Translations under genes and position numbers: made by a program
In this document: in pieces, positions 693 through 9,800 of the stretch
Layout of the letters: every line of letters begins with the position of its first letter
Position numbering within the stretch: position 1 is the stretch's first letter
NCBI GenBank assembly: GCA_001179505.1
Contig: CDMY01000227.1
Span: 124,001-188,000 of the forward strand
Direction: 5' to 3'
From: Vitrella brassicaformis CCMP3155
Taxonomy: Eukaryota; Protista; Chromerida
Length of the DNA: 64,000 bases
The notes under the pieces: generated by a model
Database searches by the model: none
Seen by the model: only the letters and a program-made list of their open reading frames with translations
What the model was told of the DNA's origin: nothing

Positions 693-2524
693 TCATTCTC
701 TGACGAGCGTGCCGCGCCCCCTCCCCAGCTTCCTGAGCAGGTCGAACACGGTGAACACGTCGGCTGTCGCATTATCGGTCTCGTCGTTGCCCAACTCATC
801 GCTGCCACGCACGCAGCACACACGCTCTAGCCGGGGAAACCTGGCCTGCTTCAATGGGAAGGGCAGACAGGCGTCCTCCGCCCCACTCAGACGCAGCACG
901 CGGCACTGGCGGAACACCAGCGGCCTCATGGTCGGCTGCCGACCGCCCCACCACCGCCACTGGTCCTCGCTGTTGGATGTCGTGCACGCCACCGTCACCT
1001 CTCGCGCATGGAAGGCGGCGAACAGGGTGACCTTCTTGACGATGTGGCGAATCATGTCGTTGTCGTGGCTGGCGTCGGGGGAGAGGACGTCCAGCGTGAC
1101 TCGCTCGACAGTGATGTGGAGGTAGGGCCGCTCGAGGACGTAGAGGAGGCACCTGGCCATGTCGAGTGAGATGACGATGCTCTTGAAGTGGATGTGCAGG
1201 GGGCGGGAGGCCTCACGGTTGGGCAGGGTGGGCGGGAAGTGGTACTGCGTCTGGATCAGCTGGGGCATGAACGGGTCACTCTCGGGCTGCGCACGCAGGT
1301 ACGCAGGCAGCGTGGCGTAGCCGTGGTCGGCAGCTGGACTGTGGCTGGGACCAGGGGTGGTGGTCACGGTGGCGCCCCCGCGGCTCGTGCTGGTGTGCCC
1401 CCACCCGTCGCCCTGTTTCTGCTCCTCCACGACGCCGCTGGCAGTGTAGCTGACGTTGGTGTTCATCTGGGTGCGCGAGCTCCACTCGTCGACCACCACC
1501 CGCTTGAACTGCCGCATGGCCGCGTGGTGCCACACGAGGGAGTGCTCGAACGTGCTGGTGCAGTACATGGGCAGACGAGTGACGGCAGCGGTCCTCTCCC
1601 CCTCCCCACTCAACACCTTGAGCCACCTGTCCCGCTGTCGACTCGGCATGCGGCGCATCAATGGCTCGCCAAGGGCCAGGTGCGAGTGTGCTGAGGGGGA
1701 GCGCGACGCAGCCAGGGCGTCACGCGACACGTCGCCGTATGTGATGACGCGAGGCGTCTCGAGGAACGAGAGGATGTTGCCGTAGACCTCCAAGGGCACG
1801 GAGAAGCCCTGCATGGGAATGGTGGTGAGCAGCTTCGCGTCACAGTGGTGGAGGGGGAGGGAGGGACTGGGCGGGGGGAACAGGCGCGCCACCAACTTCG
1901 AAGACAACACCTGTCAACAATGACGCAACACGGATGAATGGTAATTAATGTCTGTCTGCTCGTGTGCCCACCTTGTTGTGTGCGCTCTTGCAAGCGCCAT
2001 GAACCGCGTTGGCTTTCTGGCAGGCACATCGCCACGCAGCGGCAGGGTCCAGGTGTGAGCGAACAGCCGCCACTCGCTCGACGGCCCAGCAGAGCAGCAG
2101 CAGAAGGATGGCGCAGGACATCCATGGCGACGACGCGATGTGAGCCGGCGGAGGGAAAAAGCCAGCAGGCGCAGTCAATCGGTATGTCACCAGCGATTCG
2201 CCGCCCCTTGCGTGGGGTCCATCGATGTCCGCGAGAAGCCCATCGAGTTGGTGACACTTGGTCAGCAGCCACTCATCTGTGGGCATGCTGCTGCTGGCGT
2301 CTCGCTCACATAAACCCGCCAGACGCAGCAGCTTCTCCGCGCTCGACAGCGGAGCTTGCAACATGGCCTCGGCGCTGAACCAACGCACAAGAGGCGGACA
2401 AAGAGTTGATGTTGAGCCGTCGCTTGTACTGTGTTTGTGGTATCCTCACTCACCTCGAGTGTGCTCCATGTGCAGTCGTGAGCGGGAAAACCGACGGGAG
2501 CAGAGCGATGAAGGCCAGCAGCAT
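693..2524 (-). CDS. Lineage-specific hypothetical protein with F-box-like motif; upstream exons tentative
   Basis: Main exon 1910-693 is a 405-aa open frame (PLEVYGNILSFLETP F-box-like; later LRLSGAEDACLPFPL...FPRLERV). It begins right after a CAG acceptor (1913-1911). The upstream frame 2374-1972 (...AHNK|GTGGG) joins in phase 0. A further exon 2524-2454 (MLAFIALLPSVFPLTTAHG, donor GTGAG) joins in phase 2. The 5' structure is uncertain. Confidence 0.55.
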
Positions 2525-2635
2525 GGCAAGAGCGAGAATCTCGGGTCAACTTTCGAAGTCACCGATTGCGTCGAAAACTACGGTAGTTGAGGTGCTGTGG
2601 AGTCCACATAGTCACCTCCTTTCCCTCGCTCCAGT

Positions 2636-2646
2636 TGCGAGCTTAG
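2636..2646 (+). promoter_or_regulatory. Candidate promoter motif TGCGAGCTTAG in a divergent intergenic region
   Basis: The same 10-mer recurs at 14405 and 56354; see findings. Confidence 0.45.
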
Positions 2647-2810
2647 AGTGGGTCGACTTTGCCCACTGGTTTTGTGCCCCTTGGGTCACTTCTTCCTCCT
2701 GAGCCACACACAGCTCCTTCAAGGCGCAGCATCCTTCCCTTGACGCAGATCTTTCAAAAGCCATCTCTTGATTCATTGCAACGCGCTTCGCTCGGCGCTT
2801 CGCAGCCAAG

Positions 2811-5145
2811 ATGATGTCGGCAGTGCGCTGTCGGCTGGCGCCCATCGCCTCTTCCTCCCTCCCGGCCCTTGCAGCGACATCCCGTCTGCCTCTGCTGAAA
2901 TCAACGCGTCTGTTCAGCACCAACACGACGCCCAAGGCCGTCACGTCCACAGTAGTGATACATGAACAGTAGTCGCAACTACACACCTCGCTGACCGATT
3001 CCCAAACACACGTACGACTCTACTCTCTGCTGGCGACTGCAGGTGGATGTGCTGGGCAACGTGCCGACGTTGGAGCTGCAGAAGCTGCTAGAGGGAGGCC
3101 ATTACCGCAGCGTGGTCAATCTCTGCGGGCCCGAGGAAGATTACATCTCGCCTGCCAACCTGTGTACGTAAGATTGAACAAGTGGTCGATGCGATGCTGC
3201 CCAGAACATCATTCTTATGACGTTGGTCGGTCTTGTGTATGTTTGCAGGCGAGAAGTACCGGCTCCGCTATGCCTCGCTGCCCGTCGACTCGAACAAACT
3301 CTCATTCGTAAGCCTGATGGATGAATGACGTCTCGTCTGCCTGACACTTGGCTGGTTGGATTGCTGCCTCTCTTCTGCTATGCTGTGTGTGCCAGGGTCT
3401 GGGTGAGTCGCTGGTGTCTGCCCTGTCCACCATGCCCCATCCCCTGCTCGTCCAGTGCCAGTCGGCCTCACGCGCGTCGGCGGCCGCCCTCCTGCATGTG
3501 GCCTCGTCGCCCCACGAGCAGCCCGATGCCGGCTCTGGTGGCACGGCTGAGCTGTCGATGAGCCCCGAGAGCAAGGGTACCTTCATGAGCCCGACTAAGG
3601 CACTCAAGTTTGCGGAAGAGAAGGAGCTGCCATTCCTGGGGAAACCGCCCCTCAAGCAGTGGGTGGAGGTGAGGGTTTAAACACAGCACAACAGACAGAC
3701 ACGGGGGAGGAATGGGGAATGAATGCTGGCGTGTACACTTACTTAGGTCTGTGTGATGTGGTGTGTGTCGTGTGTGGGTGTGGTGTGCAGCGGTATCTGT
3801 GTGCGCGTCACGTGTCGCTGGGTCACGAGGACCCTAACCTGTTCTTCCGTCAGCTGTTCGATCGCGAGAGCTGCACCTTCACCTACATCCTTGCGGACCC
3901 CAGGACACGCGAAGGCATCATAATAGATCCCGTCCTAGAGCATCTCGAGTGAGTCAGTCAGTCAGTCGATGTGGAACACAGAGAGGGATGGATGGATGGA
4001 TGGATGGATGTGTGTCTGCATGTTTGTGGTTCCTTGGTGCAGCCGCGACTTGTCCCTGCTTGACGAGTACGGCATCATTCTCAAATACGCACTCAACACA
4101 CACGTGGTCCGCAACAGAGAGAATGATGACCCACACCCACAGTGACCCTTGGGGATAGAACATTGTTGATGTGTGTCTTGATGCTTGCAGCACGCCGACC
4201 ACGTCACCTCCACTGGCTGCATGAAGGCACGACTAGACGGTGGGTGCGTCAGGGGACCACATCATCTTTCCATCTTTCCGTCTTTCCGTCCCTCGTCTGT
4301 GTCTGTGTATGTGTTTGTGTTTGTGTTTGTGTTTGTGCAGGCTTCCGGAGCGTGTTGAGCTCTGGCTACTCGTCCGCCCGCGCTGACCTGCACGTGGACC
4401 ACGACGCCAAGCTCTTCTTTGGCGACCGCTACGTGGTCGCTCGCAGCACCCCTGGCCACACACCGGGATGCCTGACGTTTGTGCTGGACGACCACTCCAA
4501 GGCCTTCACGGGAGACGCACTCCTCATCCGCGGCTGTGGCAGGACTGATTTCCAGGTGGGTGCGTGTCCTCCATCCATCCATCCATTCGTCGAAAGCGAT
4601 CAATGCGTTCCGTTCCTGTCTTGGGGTCTGTCTTTTGTCCATCAGAGCGGTGACTCTGAGCTGCTGTATCGGGCGATATGGACGCAGATCTTCACGCTGC
4701 CCGAGAGCTGCCTCCTGTACCCGGGACACGACTATCAGGTATCACACACGCCGAACCACCAAATGCGCACCAATCAGTGCTGGTGCGATGTAATGTTTGT
4801 GTGTCCTGTGTCGTGTGTCCTGTGTCGTGTGTCCTGTGTGTGTGTGTGTGTGTATAGGGTCGCGAGTGCAGCAGTGTGTGGGAGGAGAAGCGCTACAACC
4901 CCCGGCTGACGAAGTCGCTGCCCGAGTTCAAGGAGCTGATGGCCAACCTGGGCCTGCCGCAGCCAAAGCTCATCGAGGTGGCCGTGCCCGTCAACCTCGA
5001 GGACGGCATGGCCAAGATACCATCGGGAGAGCTCAGATGCTTCGTAAGTGTCAGCTTGCAAGGCCTACGTGACACTTATAATCATCCATGCATGGTTGGA
5101 TGGCTTGGTGGCGCGTGTGTGTGTTTGCAGGGCTGCCAAGGCTGA
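2811..5145 (+). CDS. ETHE1: Mitochondrial DUF442-like (CX4R sulfurtransferase) + ETHE1-type persulfide dioxygenase fusion, ~453 aa, 11 exons
   Basis: Exons 2811-2939 (or 2951), 3043-3163, 3249-3307, 3396-3668, 3791-3948, 4043-4106, 4191-4239, 4341-4555, 4646-4738, 4858-5043 and 5131-5145 splice in frame at GT-AG sites. ETHE1 motifs: FRQLFDRESCTFTYILAD, NTHVHADHVT, TPGHTPGC, FTGDALLIRGCGRTDFQ, YPGHDY, EEKRYNPRL. N-terminal Arg/Ser/Ala-rich presequence ending RLFST. Intervening domain YRSVVNLC...LRYASLPV...PLLVQCQSASRAS. Confidence 0.9.
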
Positions 5146-6884
5146 TGGGCTGGATAGGATATTGTGGCGACACGCGTGGGTGTGAATGTGTGTGTGTGTG
5201 TGCTGCCCCGTGAGTATTTTTCGTCCTCTAGGTGATGATGCCGGCGTGATATCCTGAAACGAGTCCTGCTCGAAATGATTTCTGTTCTGCCATCCGTGCT
5301 GGGCGGTGCTGGCGTATGGCGCCGGAGGGGGACAGTGAGTGCCAGGCCAGCCAGGATTCGCCTGCTGCTCTCTGTTTCTCTCCAAAGCCATACGCCGACA
5401 AAGTCCAGCAGCAGGGCGGGCAGAAGACATGCGCACTAAGTGTTTGTTTGTTCTTGCCTGGTGAGCGATTCTTCGTAGCACCATCGCTCATGGGACGCGA
5501 TAATGCCCACCTAATTTATGTTTGATCTGTGGGTGTGTGTACCTGCAAGAGAGCCAACATCGATTCCAGCAGTTCACACCGTCACATTAATTGACGAAGC
5601 CATGTCGCCTCTCGAAGGCAGAAACCGAGACAGCACAAACCCGATTTACGAATTTGCGTGTCTCGCGAACATACATCGATGGATGGATGGATGACCTTAA
5701 GGGACGTCGTCGATTGAACGATTCATCAATGTCTATTGGTCCCCTAGCACGGGTGTCTCATTCATCAAGTCAAGCGCACACTTGTTCGCCTGCCCAGCAA
5801 TCGCTTTTCTCGCACTGCGAAGAAAATCTCAAGAGCAGCCAGCGAGAACCATCACCCGACCCACCCACCCATCCCGAGACACACAAACACCAGCTAAGCA
5901 GCACAGGAAGGCCATCCCTTCCTCTCTCCCCCCCCCTCCCTCCACCCATCCACACAACGCATCGAGGCCTTCCATGGCAAAAACAGCAACGGGTCGATTG
6001 GCTGTCTGTCTGAAATGCGTCGTTAGTTGTCCTCCTGGGCTTCGATCATCCGTGTGCACATACCATACATACGGTGCCACCCACTCGTTGGTGTCTAGAT
6101 ATATGTAGATACCAGATCGAGGGAGGGACATGACGTCACTCACGCGACAGCCGCGCTTGCAGCCATCTATTCGTTATTCCAGATAGCAGAAAAACACCAT
6201 ACCCATCCCATCCACCCAACCACTCACCGAGCCGAGAGAAGGGGAAAAAAGCATGCGTGAGAAAAAAGTGCCTAGCGAGTGCCTATGGGCACGGGCAGGC
6301 AGCTCCTGTGCGCAGGCACGGCCAATTCTCTCTAGAATGAATCATATGCCATGCCATAGGCCAGCGATTGATGCACACATGAAGATGAACGAACAGCCAC
6401 TGGGTGTCTGTCTGTGGCTGGACTGCTGGGCCAGGCCTCACTGCAGTGCACCGCACTTCGGTGGACGGACGATGTGAAGACATCCATCTGCACACCAACC
6501 AAACACCCACCAGCAGCCGATGCGCACCGTCGCGTACACAGAAACTTCAATGTGCAAACACCGACCGACACTCATTCCCACAGCCACGAGAAATTTGCCG
6601 CTCGCCCTTACCCTCCAGGCATGTAACCGCTCACTAAGCAGCCGGGCATCCATCCACATTACCCATTCATTCTGGCAGCAAAGCAAAAATGCCCGCCCCG
6701 CCCGATTGGTACGCTCACACACACACACATCCATCCATCCATCCATTCGGCCAGTCAGACATAACATACATACGTGACATACATAAGTGCGTGCACACGA
6801 AGTGTGGTGGACACATACTGACTGACCAATCACAAACTCTGCATAAAGTTAGTTAGTGCCCACTGGTTGGTTCGTTGGCCCTAC

Positions 6885-9800
6885 TCACTCGCCCCGTTTG
6901 AGCAGCAACGGGGCATAGAGGTACCCCAGCGTCGGCCTGGCGATGAAGTGCGCGTCGTTGGTCGCGGGCGGCGGGATGTCTTCATTCCATGGATGGATGG
7001 TCGATGCAAGCAAGACACGACAAATGAATGGATCCAGCCCGCGTCTGTGTCTGTGTCTGTGTCTGTTGCTGCGCTTACCGATCAGGCCACGACGGTTGCA
7101 CGGAGCCGACACCTCGAAATAATCTGAGGCACAGATGACCACACACGCGCGCAGGGGAAGAGATACATACATATGGAGCATGTATGTCAGAGGAGGACCG
7201 ACCGGCGAGTGGGACCCTCTGCGGGGTCTCGTTGGGGAAGTTGTAGAGCGCATCGACGAAGCGGCACATCATTACCTCGCCCCCCTCCATGCCCAGCAGG
7301 TACTGCTGCGCCAGGGCCACCGTCACCCCCTGGTACTCGTACAGTGACAGGTTGTTGCGCTCGTCGAGCGCCACGCCGCACCGGTCCAGCCGCCCCAGAT
7401 TGATGTACGACATCATCTCTGTCGTGAAGACGTCCTCAGAGAAGAGCATGAACAGAGGCGGCGTGCTGGTGCTGGTGGTGGACTCGCTTGCCGTGACGCC
7501 TGTGATGTTCATGTTGTCCCGCCCCTGTTGTAGGATGGCCTGCCAGATGAGGTTGTACTTGAGGCTGAAGGTGGAGTTGGAGGGGGCGTCGAAGAGCCGG
7601 CGGAAGAAGGCCGCCTCGCCACCGTCCTCTCCTTCTCCCGCGGGGCTGTCCATGGCGGCCTCCACCCAGTAGCTCGCCGAGCGGGTCGCGGCCGCACGTG
7701 CGCCGTCAATGGTGGAGTTGCCGCAGGTCTCTTCTGTCCAGCAGGACTGGTTCATCGCCAGCAGGTCCGCATAAGCCGCGAGGCCAAAGGTGCCCTTAAG
7801 TGCCAGGTTGGTCGCATTGGCGTCGGGCCCCTTGAAGTCATCTGTTGGACGCAAAGCAAGCAGCCCCACATGAGCTCATGTGTCCAGTTGTGTTTGTTGT
7901 GCCCCCACCCACTGACGGGCCTGTGTAAAGCTGGTGTGGCGGGTTTGGCAGCGATTCGTTGAGGTAGCTCCCCCACTGGTCTATAACCGGCCAGTAGTCC
8001 GCCAGATAAGACACATTCCCGCCCTGTCTGTGTGCAATGGCGGCGATGAGTATCAGCATGTCGGCCGTCTCTTCCATAGGCATGTCCCAGTTTCGATAGC
8101 TGCACAATCATCCGCACATACGCACACACATGGATGGAAGGACATGCACCCACGGCTCCTGCTTGGCTCACTCGGGAGTGTCAGCGACGGGCCAGATGCC
8201 GAGGTGGTGTGGGGCCCACGGCTTGCGGTAGTGCGACAGCGTCTTGTTGGCCGAGTAGTCAAGGATGGGCACGAGCATCAGCCGGAGCACCTCGGGGCTG
8301 AACAGCAGCAGCATGGGCGACGTGGGGAAGATCACGTCAACCTATGAACACACACACACACACACAGGGACACATGTGTTGTAGAGGAGTATCCATCCAT
8401 CCATCGTGTCTCGGATGGATGAGGGCACACCGTGTTGAGCATGCCGTTGGTGGATATCTCTTTCTGGAAGACGCGGTGCTCGTTGATGTAGTCGTCATGC
8501 ACGACCTTCTGCCCACCCGTCACCTGGCCACGGACATGAATGACAGGACACACACGACTGTCTTGCGAGTCTTGGCGGGGGGATGTGCGCGTGTGTGTGT
8601 GTGCTCATGGTGGGCATACATACCTGTCTGTATACAAGTGACGCCACGGCCGCATACTTGGGCCCACCAGTCATGAAAAGGTCATCCACAAGACCCTCAT
8701 CGAACGCAATACTCCTCTTCTGCACACACACACACACACACACGCACACACGCACACGCATCTCCGTGCACAAATCGCTGGCCCTCCACCACCCTGCCTG
8801 TGTGCGCAGCGCAGCGCACCTGTTCATCATCCCACTTTGCCATGGCGTCCTTGAGCATCTCCCCAGTGGGGTGGCTCGAGTGCCACTTGTTGTCGAATGC
8901 CCCCACCAGAGGCATGCCCTCCTCCATCCGATACACGTTGCGCCACGCCGGCTGCATGAGACGGCCGAAGAAGTTGACAGTGATCCGGTCGTCGAAGGCG
9001 AAGAGAACCCGCCTGGTGGCCGACTCGCCGGGCGCCACACTCCCGAGGTCCATCATGAGACCAAGGGCGGCGTTCCTGGCTGCACATGTATGTGTCAGAG
9101 AGACGAGTGCGTGGCACGTGTGTGTGTGTGTGTGTGTTTTGTGGTCACCAGGGCCGTCATTTCGGTACTGCTGGTTGGTCGGTTCCGTCACTTTCGAGAC
9201 CAGCGCCGCGAACTTGTCAGCGGTGAACTCAGGGTCCGTGAACGCATCGATGGCCGCTCGCCAAGTCGTCCTGAGCCACACACACAGCAGACGGGATGAT
9301 GAAGTTGAACACGGGCACACGTAGACGACCGACGACCGTCGTACCTTTGCGAGTTGCCCCTGCGGAATTGGTCGCTGAGGAAGAGTTCCTCCATCGACGC
9401 GTTGCCGGCAGGTGCCCCGTTGTCATCGATGCTGCCGTGTGTGTCGAAGAGGGTGCTCGTGAAGGGGACGGTGCCGTTGTCCTTGGGCGTGACCAGGTGG
9501 AAGAACCCGTGATTGGGCGTCATGCCGTCGCCTTTGAGGCCCAGCTCCACCTGAACCAATCAATCAGGAAGCAGGCCCCGGCAGACGGACAAACATGCAA
9601 GCGTCATGCATGTGCACGCCTTCGTGTGTCTGTGTGTACCTGGTGGAAGTTGCCAACGGTCAGGACGTCATGGCCCTCCACTGCCGGCGCGTTCAACGCG
9701 ATGGCCACATGCTCATCCCCCCCAGTCACCCCAACATGCCCAGTGGTCTGGTACAGCAGCTGCACGTCGTGCGCGCGATCGTCCGTCGACTCCACGTCGA

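What the first reader, a model, noticed from the sequence alone, without database searches (positions are those of the whole stretch)
2811..5145. Mitochondrion-targeted DUF442-like sulfurtransferase fused to an ETHE1-type (type I) persulfide dioxygenase
Seen: four small exons, invisible as one ORF, splice in frame ahead of the ETHE1 domain. They encode YRSVVNLCGPEED...LCEKYRLRYASLPVD...ALSTMPHPLLVQCQSASRAS, and a presequence ending RLFST precedes them. Established: these blocks match the DUF442 pattern (SVINLR / YVHIPV / PVLxxCxSxxR), whose CX4R loop Cys (codon 3456-3458 here) acts as a rhodanese-like sulfur carrier. Bacterial Blh proteins fuse DUF442 to a persulfide dioxygenase, whereas animal and plant ETHE1 are stand-alone and rely on separate rhodanese/SQR. 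The dioxygenase here carries the type I GCGRTDFQ signature, not the GTARCDFPGG type I recall for Blh. Inference: an independent eukaryotic fusion giving one mitochondrial enzyme that loads sulfane sulfur onto glutathione and oxidises it to sulfite. I do not know of a description of this in an alveolate.
Basis: partly seen in the sequence, partly recalled or inferred. Interest (0 to 1): 0.85.

Follow-up and report, generated by a model that had tools for sequence, protein, structure and literature searches.

The report
Algal sulfurtransferase–ETHE1 fusion enzyme gene
This expressed Vitrella gene joins a very divergent DUF442-type sulfur-carrier domain to an ordinary ETHE1 persulfide dioxygenase behind a mitochondrial-type leader; databases do not recognise the front domain, yet the same layout occurs in several other algae.

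Summary
An 11-exon, all GT-AG gene (2811-5145, + strand) encodes 457 aa. Spliced contigs from three public runs carry all exons as one mRNA. One boundary needs correcting: exon 6 ends at 4106, which restores the HVHADH metal motif.

The window is Vitrella brassicaformis. The gene model is already public (CEL95210.1 / A0A0G4EH25) but is named only "persulfide dioxygenase".

- **N-terminal domain:** about 155 aa, with no Pfam or NCBIfam hit of its own. It belongs solidly (89 bits) to a eukaryotic family with an invariant C-X4-R loop.
- **Link to DUF442:** the family profile hits the two solved DUF442 structures (E 1e-8 and 4e-5). Between 7 and 11 of its 17 members hit PF04273 or TIGR01244. The AlphaFold model (pLDDT 90) matches DUF442 best.
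- **C-terminal domain:** a type I ETHE1 (E 3e-80 to human ETHE1), not a Blh orthologue.

One point is not supported: the fusion is not special to alveolates. Vitrella has three paralogues. Nannochloropsis, Tribonema and marine eukaryote contigs carry the same fusion, and ESM Atlas clusters suggest chlorophytes do too.

I found no paper describing this fusion in eukaryotes. It is a new variant of a known kind, of moderate interest.

The parts
2811..2951 (+). Exon 1: start codon and a 47-aa presequence (MMSAVRCRLAPIASSS...RLFSTNTTPKAVTST)
   Evidence: In-frame TGA at 2769-2771. The 47 aa hold 6 R/K, 0 D/E and 15 S/T. Joint 2951->3043 is seen in X1, X7 and X8.
3043..3163 (+). Exon 2: first strands and helix of the DUF442-like domain (VDVLGNV...YRSVVNLCGPEED...)
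3249..3307 (+). Exon 3: EKYRLRYASLPVDSNKLSF (the 'hPV' strand of the domain)
   Evidence: Joints 3163->3249 and 3307->3396; alignment.
3396..3668 (+). Exon 4: active-site strand, loop and helix, a disordered insert of about 25 aa shared by the three Vitrella paralogues (Nannochloropsis P0165 has a shorter one at the same place), and the helices WAxExxLPF...WV
   Evidence: The exon borders are conserved in a paralogue's genomic ORF, P0124.
3456..3473 (+). C-X4-R loop CQSASR (Cys TGC 3456-3458, Arg CGC 3471-3473)
   Evidence: C and R are the only invariant columns among 17 family domains; codon checked.
3791..3948 (+). Exon 5: linker helix and start of the ETHE1 domain (LFFRQLFDRESCTFTYILAD...)
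4043..4106 (+). Exon 6: ends in ...NTHV. The corrected donor is at 4107.
   Evidence: (joint 4105->4190, cut +1).
4191..4239 (+). Exon 7: HADH, which completes the HxHxDH metal motif
   Evidence: H227, H229, D231 and H232 invariant in A3.
4341..4555 (+). Exon 8: TPGHT, FTGDALLIRGCGRTDFQ (signature at 4532-4555)
4646..4738 (+). Exon 9: SGDSELLY...LYPGHDYQ
4858..5043 (+). Exon 10: C-terminal helices of ETHE1 (NPRLTK...AVPVNL)
5131..5145 (+). Exon 11: GCQG followed by the stop codon
   Evidence: Joint 5043->5131 in three runs.

Best explanation
The gene encodes one bifunctional enzyme of sulfide detoxification, very probably imported into the mitochondrion.

**Shown here**
- It is one mRNA and one reading frame.
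- An N-terminal domain of about 155 aa has the cysteine-phosphatase-like fold of DUF442/TIGR01244 sulfur transferases and an invariant Cys-X4-Arg loop (Cys128 and Arg133 of the 457-aa protein).
- A long helix joins this domain to a complete type I persulfide dioxygenase (ETHE1) that keeps all metal-binding and GCGRTDFQ motifs.

**Inferred by analogy with bacterial Blh and the SQR-fused DUF442**
- Cys128 takes up a sulfane sulfur as a persulfide. The donor would be thiosulfate, polysulfide or the SQR product.
- It passes that sulfur to glutathione.
- The ETHE1 domain oxidises the resulting GSSH to sulfite.
- The reverse use, GSSH plus sulfite giving thiosulfate, is equally possible chemically.

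**Origin**
- The fusion is older than the three Vitrella paralogues.
- It belongs to a family of such fusions spread among eukaryotic algae.
- It is not an orthologue of bacterial Blh.
For: - **Transcript:** spliced contigs in three runs; identical MMETSP and public proteins.
- **N-terminal domain, sequence:** an HMM built from 14 non-Vitrella members hits residues 46-199 at 89 bits, E 7e-24. The family profile hits the DUF442 structures 3gxg/3gxh at E 1.3e-8 and 2f46 at E 4e-5, while phosphatases score above 0.03. PF04273 matches 7 of 17 members, and one full protein, P0122, scores above the Pfam cut-off. TIGR01244 matches 11 of 17 and the Blh model 7 of 17.
- **N-terminal domain, structure:** the AF2 model has pLDDT 89.7 and pTM 0.83. 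The best Foldseek PDB hit is the DUF442 structure 3gxh. The best ESM Atlas match is a bacterial cluster that is 93% PF04273 (TM 0.75/0.78, rmsd 1.9 Å).
- **Active site:** C and R of the loop are the only invariant columns.
- **ETHE1 domain:** human 4chl E 3e-80, Arabidopsis 2gcu E 2e-78, but type II 4ysk only E 6e-19. It is 54-67% identical to animal ETHE1 and lies with eukaryotic ETHE1 in the tree.
- **Biochemistry of DUF442:** sulfurtransferase activity and coupling to the dioxygenase were measured for Blh (PMC5823870) and for the Cupriavidus DUF442 (PMC9163753).
- **Leader:** 6 R/K and no D/E in 47 aa.
- **Congruent paralogue trees for both domains**.
Against: - The window's own N-terminal domain gives no hit to PF04273, TIGR01244 or DSPc when scanned alone, so the assignment is transitive.
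- No activity, metal content or location was measured.
- No targeting predictor was available. In an alga with a complex plastid, the leader could conceivably serve another compartment.
- The full-length AF2 pTM is only 0.72, and coordinates could not be inspected. Active-site proximity is therefore unknown.
Confidence: 0.78

Rival explanations
1. The N-terminal domain is a dual-specificity or tyrosine phosphatase-type enzyme, or a phosphate-binding regulator, attached to ETHE1. It is not a sulfur carrier.
For: The fold is the cysteine-phosphatase fold. PRL-1, VH1 and MKP5 follow closely in Foldseek. Some members give sub-threshold DSPc hits.
Against: - The loop is C-X4-R in all 17 domains, not the C-X5-R of PTPs and DSPs.
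- The Asp of the 'PVD' position, where a general acid would sit, is present in only 7 of 17.
- DUF442 proteins score 5-7 orders of magnitude better than any phosphatase.
- Fusion to a persulfide dioxygenase matches the sulfur role shown for Blh (PMC5823870).
Confidence: 0.07
2. The domain is a sulfurtransferase working downstream of the dioxygenase. It would move sulfane sulfur from GSSH to the sulfite just made, giving thiosulfate as the end product. In my own recollection, rhodanese-PDO fusions are reported to work this way.
For: DUF442 catalyses GSSH:sulfite transfer in vitro (PMC9163753). The nearest bacterial type I PDOs are fused to a rhodanese (BpPRF 5ve3, E 3e-78).
Against: In the bacterial rhodanese fusions listed here the rhodanese follows the PDO: the window's ETHE1 part aligns from residue 21 of the 373-residue BpPRF chain. 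Here the sulfurtransferase comes first, as in Blh, where feeding of GSSH to the PDO was shown (PMC5823870). Sequence cannot tell the direction.
Confidence: 0.3
3. The domain is a redox or persulfide sensor, or an interaction module, that regulates the ETHE1 domain. It would not turn over sulfur catalytically.
For: In Cupriavidus the fused DUF442 modulates its partner enzyme's activity (PMC9163753). The Vitrella paralogues carry a disordered insert of about 25 aa next to the active-site helix.
Against: Cys and Arg are strictly kept across very divergent members, including stand-alone and tandem proteins without any PDO. This argues for an autonomous catalytic site.
Confidence: 0.1

Closest known systems
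Blh (bifunctional sulfur transferase/dioxygenase of the bigR operon; Xylella, Agrobacterium; NF040641)
   Same: The order of domains is the same: an N-terminal DUF442-type C-X4-R domain, then an MBL-fold persulfide dioxygenase. The whole-protein predicted shape resembles the Blh cluster (TM 0.53/0.57 over residues 44-453). Sulfurtransferase and dioxygenase activities are coupled in Blh (PMC5823870).
   Different: - The protein scores 88.5 bits against a cut-off of 625 for the Blh model.
- The dioxygenase is type I ETHE1, whereas Blh is a separate subgroup (PMC5584763).
- The N-terminal domain is nearer to the Shewanella 3gxg type (…C-x4-RASA) than to 2f46 and has extra C-terminal helices.
- It is eukaryotic, intron-rich and carries a presequence.
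ETHE1 (type I persulfide dioxygenase of animal and plant mitochondria; PDB 4chl, 2gcu)
   Same: E 3e-80 and 2e-78 over the whole domain. HxHxDH, TPGHT and FTGDALLIRGCGRTDFQ are all kept. It groups with eukaryotic ETHE1.
   Different: The animal and plant ETHE1 entries seen here are single-domain proteins of about 230-310 aa. This one carries an extra catalytic-type domain of about 155 aa between the presequence and ETHE1.
DUF442 / BLH_phosphatase (PF04273), TIGR01244 sulfur transferases; structures 3gxg/3gxh and 2f46; DUF442 fused to SQR in Cupriavidus
   Same: Same fold, same C-X4-R loop, and significant profile-level similarity.
   Different: The window's domain is too divergent for the Pfam and NCBIfam models. 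The eukaryotic subfamily has the conserved tail 'WAxExxLPF..L..WV', and the Vitrella paralogues have a disordered insert.
PDO-rhodanese fusions (BpPRF 5ve3; CstB)
   Same: A type I PDO (in PRF) joined to a sulfurtransferase in one chain. The PDO part is E 3e-78 to this protein.
   Different: The partner there is a true rhodanese (PF00581), and in BpPRF the PDO part starts at residue 21, so the partner lies C-terminal. Here the partner is a PTP-fold DUF442-like domain at the N-terminus.

Membership tests
DUF442 / BLH_phosphatase (PF04273) = TIGR01244 sulfur transferase | The protein itself matches the family HMM at or above the curated cut-off | tested here: not met
   P0138, P0138:40-200 and P0138:44-200 give no PF04273 or TIGR01244 hit, even at E<=10 (Pfam) or E<=1 (NCBIfam). 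Single exons give none either.
DUF442 / BLH_phosphatase (PF04273) = TIGR01244 sulfur transferase | Significant profile-level homology between its own family and bona fide DUF442 proteins | tested here: met
   - The A2 profile hits 3gxg/3gxh at E 1.3e-8 and 2f46 at E 4e-5.
- PF04273 matches 7 of 17 domains at E<=1, and the full protein P0122 scores 32.7 bits against a cut-off of 26.1.
- TIGR01244 matches 11 of 17.
- The window protein joins the family at 89 bits using an HMM that excludes Vitrella.
DUF442 / BLH_phosphatase (PF04273) = TIGR01244 sulfur transferase | Cysteine-phosphatase-like alpha/beta fold with the loop between a strand and a helix | tested here: met
   - AF2 pLDDT 89.7, with strand 80-83, the loop, then helix 88-100.
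- Foldseek top hits are 3gxh/3gxg.
- The Atlas top cluster is 93% PF04273, TM 0.75/0.78.
DUF442 / BLH_phosphatase (PF04273) = TIGR01244 sulfur transferase | C-X4-R active-site loop | tested here: met
   CQSASR at 3456-3473. C and R are invariant in 17 of 17 domains. 3gxg (CLANYR) and 2f46 (CRTGTR) have the same spacing.
DUF442 / BLH_phosphatase (PF04273) = TIGR01244 sulfur transferase | Sulfurtransferase activity dependent on the loop Cys | not testable with these tools
   Known for Blh and the Cupriavidus DUF442 (PMC5823870, PMC9163753). Not measured for any eukaryotic member that I could find.
ETHE1 / type I persulfide dioxygenase | MBL fold with HxHxDH, a second His and an Asp ligand, and the GCGRTDFQ region | tested here: met
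   NTHVHADH, TPGHT and FTGDALLIRGCGRTDFQ are invariant in A3. Lactamase_B hit.
ETHE1 / type I persulfide dioxygenase | Closer to ETHE1 than to other PDO subgroups or to glyoxalase II | tested here: met
   4chl E 3e-80, 2gcu E 2e-78, 4ysb E 1.5e-64. Against these, type II 4ysk is E 6.5e-19, 3r2u is E 1e-14 and GloB is E 1e-12. Tree.
ETHE1 / type I persulfide dioxygenase | GSSH-dependent O2 consumption and sulfite formation | not testable with these tools
   Needs an enzyme assay.
Blh equivalog (NF040641) | Whole-protein score at or above the curated cut-off (625 bits) | tested here: not met
   88.5 bits for P0138, and 79-112 bits for the other seven fused eukaryotic proteins scanned.
Dual-specificity / tyrosine phosphatases (DSPc, PTP) | C-X5-R P-loop and a conserved general-acid Asp | tested here: not met
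   The loop is one residue shorter in all 17 domains. The candidate Asp is present in only 7 of 17. DSPc hits are sub-threshold only.
Mitochondrial matrix proteins with a cleavable presequence | Basic, hydroxylated N-terminal leader free of acidic residues; import shown experimentally | tested here: inconclusive
   The composition fits: 6 R/K, 0 D/E and 15 S/T in 47 aa. No predictor or localisation data were available.

The most novel reading that the evidence does not exclude
A eukaryote-specific subfamily of DUF442-like sulfur carriers, invisible to Pfam, was fused once to ETHE1 in an algal ancestor, or was spread by endosymbiotic gene transfer among lineages with plastids. It now exists as paralogues sent to different compartments. 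In Vitrella one has a mitochondrial-type leader, one has an acidic N-terminus, and one has a 5'-open frame. A Nannochloropsis copy has a signal-peptide-like leader. This would give algae a one-chain sulfide/persulfide detoxification module outside as well as inside mitochondria.
Probability: 0.25. Interest if true: 0.6.

Novelty: new variant of a known kind. Interest (0 to 1): 0.45.

Why it matters
The eukaryotic ETHE1 proteins that have been studied, in animals and plants, are stand-alone enzymes that depend on separate rhodanese and SQR proteins. This gene shows that many algae instead use a single chain joining a sulfur-carrier domain to ETHE1, as bacteria do with Blh, PRF and CstB. It pairs a different partner (a DUF442-like domain) with a different dioxygenase (type I).

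Standard domain models do not detect the N-terminal domain, so databases label these proteins simply as "persulfide dioxygenase". Recognising the domain would do three things:
- correct the annotation of a whole algal protein family;
- provide a natural system for studying coupling between sulfurtransferase and ETHE1;
- add a marker for tracing gene sharing between chromerids, ochrophytes and green algae.

It does not overturn the known chemistry of sulfide oxidation.

Tried and rejected
- **Pfam on single exons:** only Lactamase_B for exon 8. The pieces were too short to judge the N-terminal domain.
- **Exhaustive phmmer with exon 4 alone:** only 4 hits. These nevertheless supplied the bridge to PF04273 (P0122, P0123).
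- **Word-indexed search with P0001 residues 20-185:** found only itself. The later alignment search found the window protein and ten more fused proteins, so the blank came from the word index and not from real absence.
- **The search for related loci in bacterial genomes with A2 and A4:** I therefore have no bacterial DUF442 or Blh sequences. No hhalign against a DUF442 alignment and no tree including Blh could be made.
could not be checked.
- **Literature searches:** DUF442+ETHE1+eukaryot, ETHE1/PDO with Vitrella/Chromera/Nannochloropsis and PF04273/TIGR01244 gave no description of the eukaryotic fusion. A search for the TSA prefix GECG0 did not identify that organism.
- **Window as a second species:** I considered and rejected the idea that the window is a species other than the one carrying P0001 and P0127. 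All three proteins are Vitrella brassicaformis paralogues.
- **Neighbouring ORFs:** only a glutaminase-A-like fragment was found, with no sulfur-pathway neighbour.
- **Chromera, dinoflagellates and apicomplexans:** none appeared among the listed hits. The searches were capped, so this is not evidence of absence.
Full report
**Observation.** I read the region 2400-5600 and spliced it at GT..AG sites. Eleven exons give one open frame. Aligning the product with its closest homologue exposed a one-codon error in my first model at the exon 6 donor. The true exon 6 is 4043-4106, which gives NTHVHADH, the metallo-beta-lactamase HxHxDH motif. The corrected product has 457 aa. An in-frame TGA at 2769-2771 fixes the start codon at 2811.

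**Transcript evidence.** Eight public runs hold the stretch. I laid four of them on 2500-5600.
- Runs X1, X7 and X8, from three studies, each contain a single contig lacking all introns. The X1 and X8 contigs start in the 5'UTR (2779 and 2689) and the X7 contig starts at exon 2. They continue through exon 11 into the 3'UTR (X1 to 5508; X7 and X8 to the end of the stretch at 5600).
- Seven joints are listed with GT..AG ends. One is 4105->4190 (cut +1), which confirms the corrected exon 6.
- The three joints beside microsatellites were dropped by the tool. The contig coordinates leave exactly 124 nt and 103 nt between listed pieces, as the model requires.
- The DUF442-like exons and the ETHE1 exons are therefore one mRNA.

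**Identity of the genome and the public record.**
- An alignment query (A1) retrieved P0138. This is CEL95210.1 / UniProt A0A0G4EH25 of Vitrella brassicaformis CCMP3155, 456 aa, named only "persulfide dioxygenase".
- P0138 equals my model minus the first Met. The MMETSP transcript protein P0254 equals my model exactly.
- Earlier notes of this scan also call this genome Vitrella.
- The gene model is therefore public, and what is unannotated is the N-terminal domain. Pfam finds only Lactamase_B in the whole protein.

**What the N-terminal domain is.**
- *Scanned alone:* neither the exons nor residues 40-200 nor the Vitrella paralogues hit any relevant Pfam or NCBIfam model.
- *First bridge:* an exhaustive phmmer search with exon 4 found four proteins. 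P0122 is a tandem two-domain protein that hits PF04273 BLH_phosphatase at 32.7 bits (cut-off 26.1). P0123 is a 144-aa protein of the red alga Bangiopsis that hits at 24 bits.
- *Family alignment:* the alignment search added ten fused proteins. The 17 aligned N-terminal domains (A2) have only two invariant columns, the Cys and the Arg of a C-X4-R loop, followed by a nearly invariant Ala.
- *Window protein in the family:* an HMM built from the 14 non-Vitrella domains hits window-protein residues 46-199 at 89 bits, E 7e-24 for a nominal database of one million.
- *Family versus solved structures:* the family profile finds the two solved DUF442 proteins first, 3gxg/3gxh at E 1.3e-8 and 2f46 at E 4e-5. 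Dual-specificity phosphatases come only at E 0.03 or worse.
- *Family versus curated models:* member by member, PF04273 matches 7 of 17. TIGR01244 "sulfur transferase" matches 11 of 17, and the Blh model 7 of 17.
- *Predicted structure:* AlphaFold2 on A2 gives a confident model, pLDDT 89.7 and pTM 0.83. It has four strands alternating with helices, the loop lies between strand 80-83 and helix 88-100, and a low-confidence insert spans about 101-128.
- *Fold searches:* Foldseek ranks 3gxh/3gxg first, followed by PRL-1, VH1 and MKP5. The ESM Atlas shape search ranks first a bacterial cluster that is 93% PF04273 (TM 0.75/0.78, rmsd 1.9 Å over 133 residues).

I conclude that this is a divergent member of the DUF442/TIGR01244 superfamily. 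It forms part of a eukaryotic subfamily with its own C-terminal helices (WAxExxLPF..L..WV).

A phosphatase reading is unlikely for three reasons. The loop is one residue shorter than C-X5-R in every member. The would-be general-acid Asp is present in only 7 of 17. DUF442 proteins outscore phosphatases by orders of magnitude.

**What the C-terminal domain is.**
- P0138 hits human ETHE1 4chl at E 3.4e-80, Arabidopsis ETHE1 2gcu at E 2.1e-78, the Burkholderia PDO-rhodanese fusion 5ve3 at E 2.9e-78 and Myxococcus type I PDO 4ysb at E 1.5e-64.
- By contrast, the type II PDO 4ysk scores only E 6.5e-19 and glyoxalase II about E 1e-12.
- All metal and substrate motifs are invariant in a 24-sequence alignment (A3).
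- Against NCBI's Blh equivalog model it scores 88.5 bits where 625 are required.
- In a tree of the dioxygenase domain, fused and unfused eukaryotic proteins lie together, apart from the bacterial sequences (support 87).
- The literature treats ETHE1, Blh and SdoA as separate subgroups (PMC5584763).

**Distribution of the fusion.**
- *Vitrella:* there are three fused paralogues: the window gene, A0A0G4GZ50 (P0125; its transcript form is P0001) and A0A0G4ENL7 (P0127). Transcript contigs of the second are intron-free. The transcript contig of the third holds the whole fusion, interrupted only by an assembly gap. In both domain trees the three form one starred clade with the same internal order. 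The fusion therefore predates their duplication.
- *Other named organisms:* the same architecture occurs in Nannochloropsis gaditana (I2CRD5/P0165 and P0213), Tribonema gayanum (P0237/P0269) and an unnamed TSA organism (P0140).
- *Environmental lineages:* it also occurs in several uncultured marine lineages (P0139/141/143, P0155/267, P0209, P0250). One of these lies on a TARA metagenome contig beside a gene with cNMP-binding and (faint) RGS domain hits. That points to a eukaryote rather than a bacterium.
- *ESM Atlas:* 43 of the 60 nearest clusters by features are Lactamase_B-only; the three shown are eukaryotic, 384-480 aa, with Chlorophyta the commonest label. One of them, the 480-aa cluster, matches the N-terminal domain model at TM 0.76.
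- *Domain without a dioxygenase:* it occurs in tandem in Heterosigma akashiwo (P0121 cluster) and singly in Bangiopsis.

Whether all the fusions go back to one event is unresolved, because deep branches are weak.

**Mechanism.**
- *Shown:* one chain holds a presequence, a DUF442-like C-X4-R domain, a long linker helix (147-163 of the mature model) and ETHE1. Both domains are confidently folded in the full-length model (pLDDT 85.9, pTM 0.72).
- *From the literature:* the DUF442 domain of Blh transfers sulfane sulfur from thiosulfate to cyanide or GSH and thereby feeds GSSH to its ETHE1-like domain (PMC5823870). The Cupriavidus DUF442 accelerates polysulfide-to-GSH and GSSH-to-sulfite transfer and stimulates PDO (PMC9163753).
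- *Inferred for this protein:* Cys128 cycles through a persulfide and hands sulfur to or from glutathione next to the dioxygenase. This would limit free sulfane sulfur during mitochondrial sulfide oxidation. Sequence cannot settle the direction, whether it feeds GSSH or makes thiosulfate.
- *Location:* the leader of 47 aa has 6 R/K, no D/E and 15 S/T, which fits a matrix presequence. No predictor was available.

**Novelty.** I found no paper on a eukaryotic DUF442-ETHE1 protein. A recent preprint abstract still contrasts the single-domain human PDO with fused bacterial ones (PMC12934615, listed). Sulfurtransferase-PDO fusions as such are well known in bacteria. I therefore rate this a new variant of a known kind, of moderate interest.

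**Limits.**
- I could not obtain bacterial DUF442 or Blh sequences, so "independent of Blh" rests on scores and subgroup membership, not on a joint tree.
- The runs are not on record as RNA. Their RNA nature is inferred from the exact removal of all ten introns.

Noticed in passing
P0125 (CEM36350.1) versus transcript loci L001-L004: The public model of the second Vitrella paralogue lacks 16 residues (VDLKREGDLFFRQ region) that the transcript-derived P0001 has, so one exon border looks mis-set. It also starts 53 aa upstream of P0001's Met. In the transcripts that upstream frame is open to the contig end, so this paralogue may also have a leader.
   Followed up: partly
P0213 (Nannochloropsis gaditana), N-terminus: The leader has a strongly hydrophobic stretch (LVIFYGICCYSATAF), followed by a Ser/Arg-rich segment. 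This resembles an ochrophyte signal peptide plus transit peptide, so this copy may go to the plastid. Tribonema isoform P0269 has an Arg-rich mitochondrial-type leader instead.
   Followed up: partly
P0121 cluster (Heterosigma akashiwo) and P0122: These proteins consist of two tandem copies of the same C-X4-RASA domain and have no dioxygenase. In the tree, the first domains of the two proteins pair with each other, which points to an old internal duplication.
   Followed up: partly
window 3942-4023, 4289-4344, 4825-4864: There are microsatellites inside introns 5, 7 and 9: (GGAT)n, (GTTT/GT)n and a repeated CCTGTGTCGTGTGT unit. They caused the reads tool to drop the three joints beside them.
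   Followed up: yes
window about 2668-2689 (5' end of the X8 contig): The X8 transcript contig carries 21 letters upstream of position 2689 that do not lie on the window. This could be a 5'UTR intron, a leader or assembly noise.
   Followed up: no
window 7078-7869 (- strand): An ORF here has a glutaminase A six-hairpin domain (PF16335, E 1.5e-14). It is probably an exon of a neighbouring gene unrelated to sulfur metabolism.
   Followed up: partly
P0124 and P0126 (ENA contig of 5860 nt): These genomic ORF fragments come from a close relative or strain of Vitrella. They show that the borders of the exon-4 equivalent (…|GLAMRL … QWVK|) are conserved between paralogues.
   Followed up: partly
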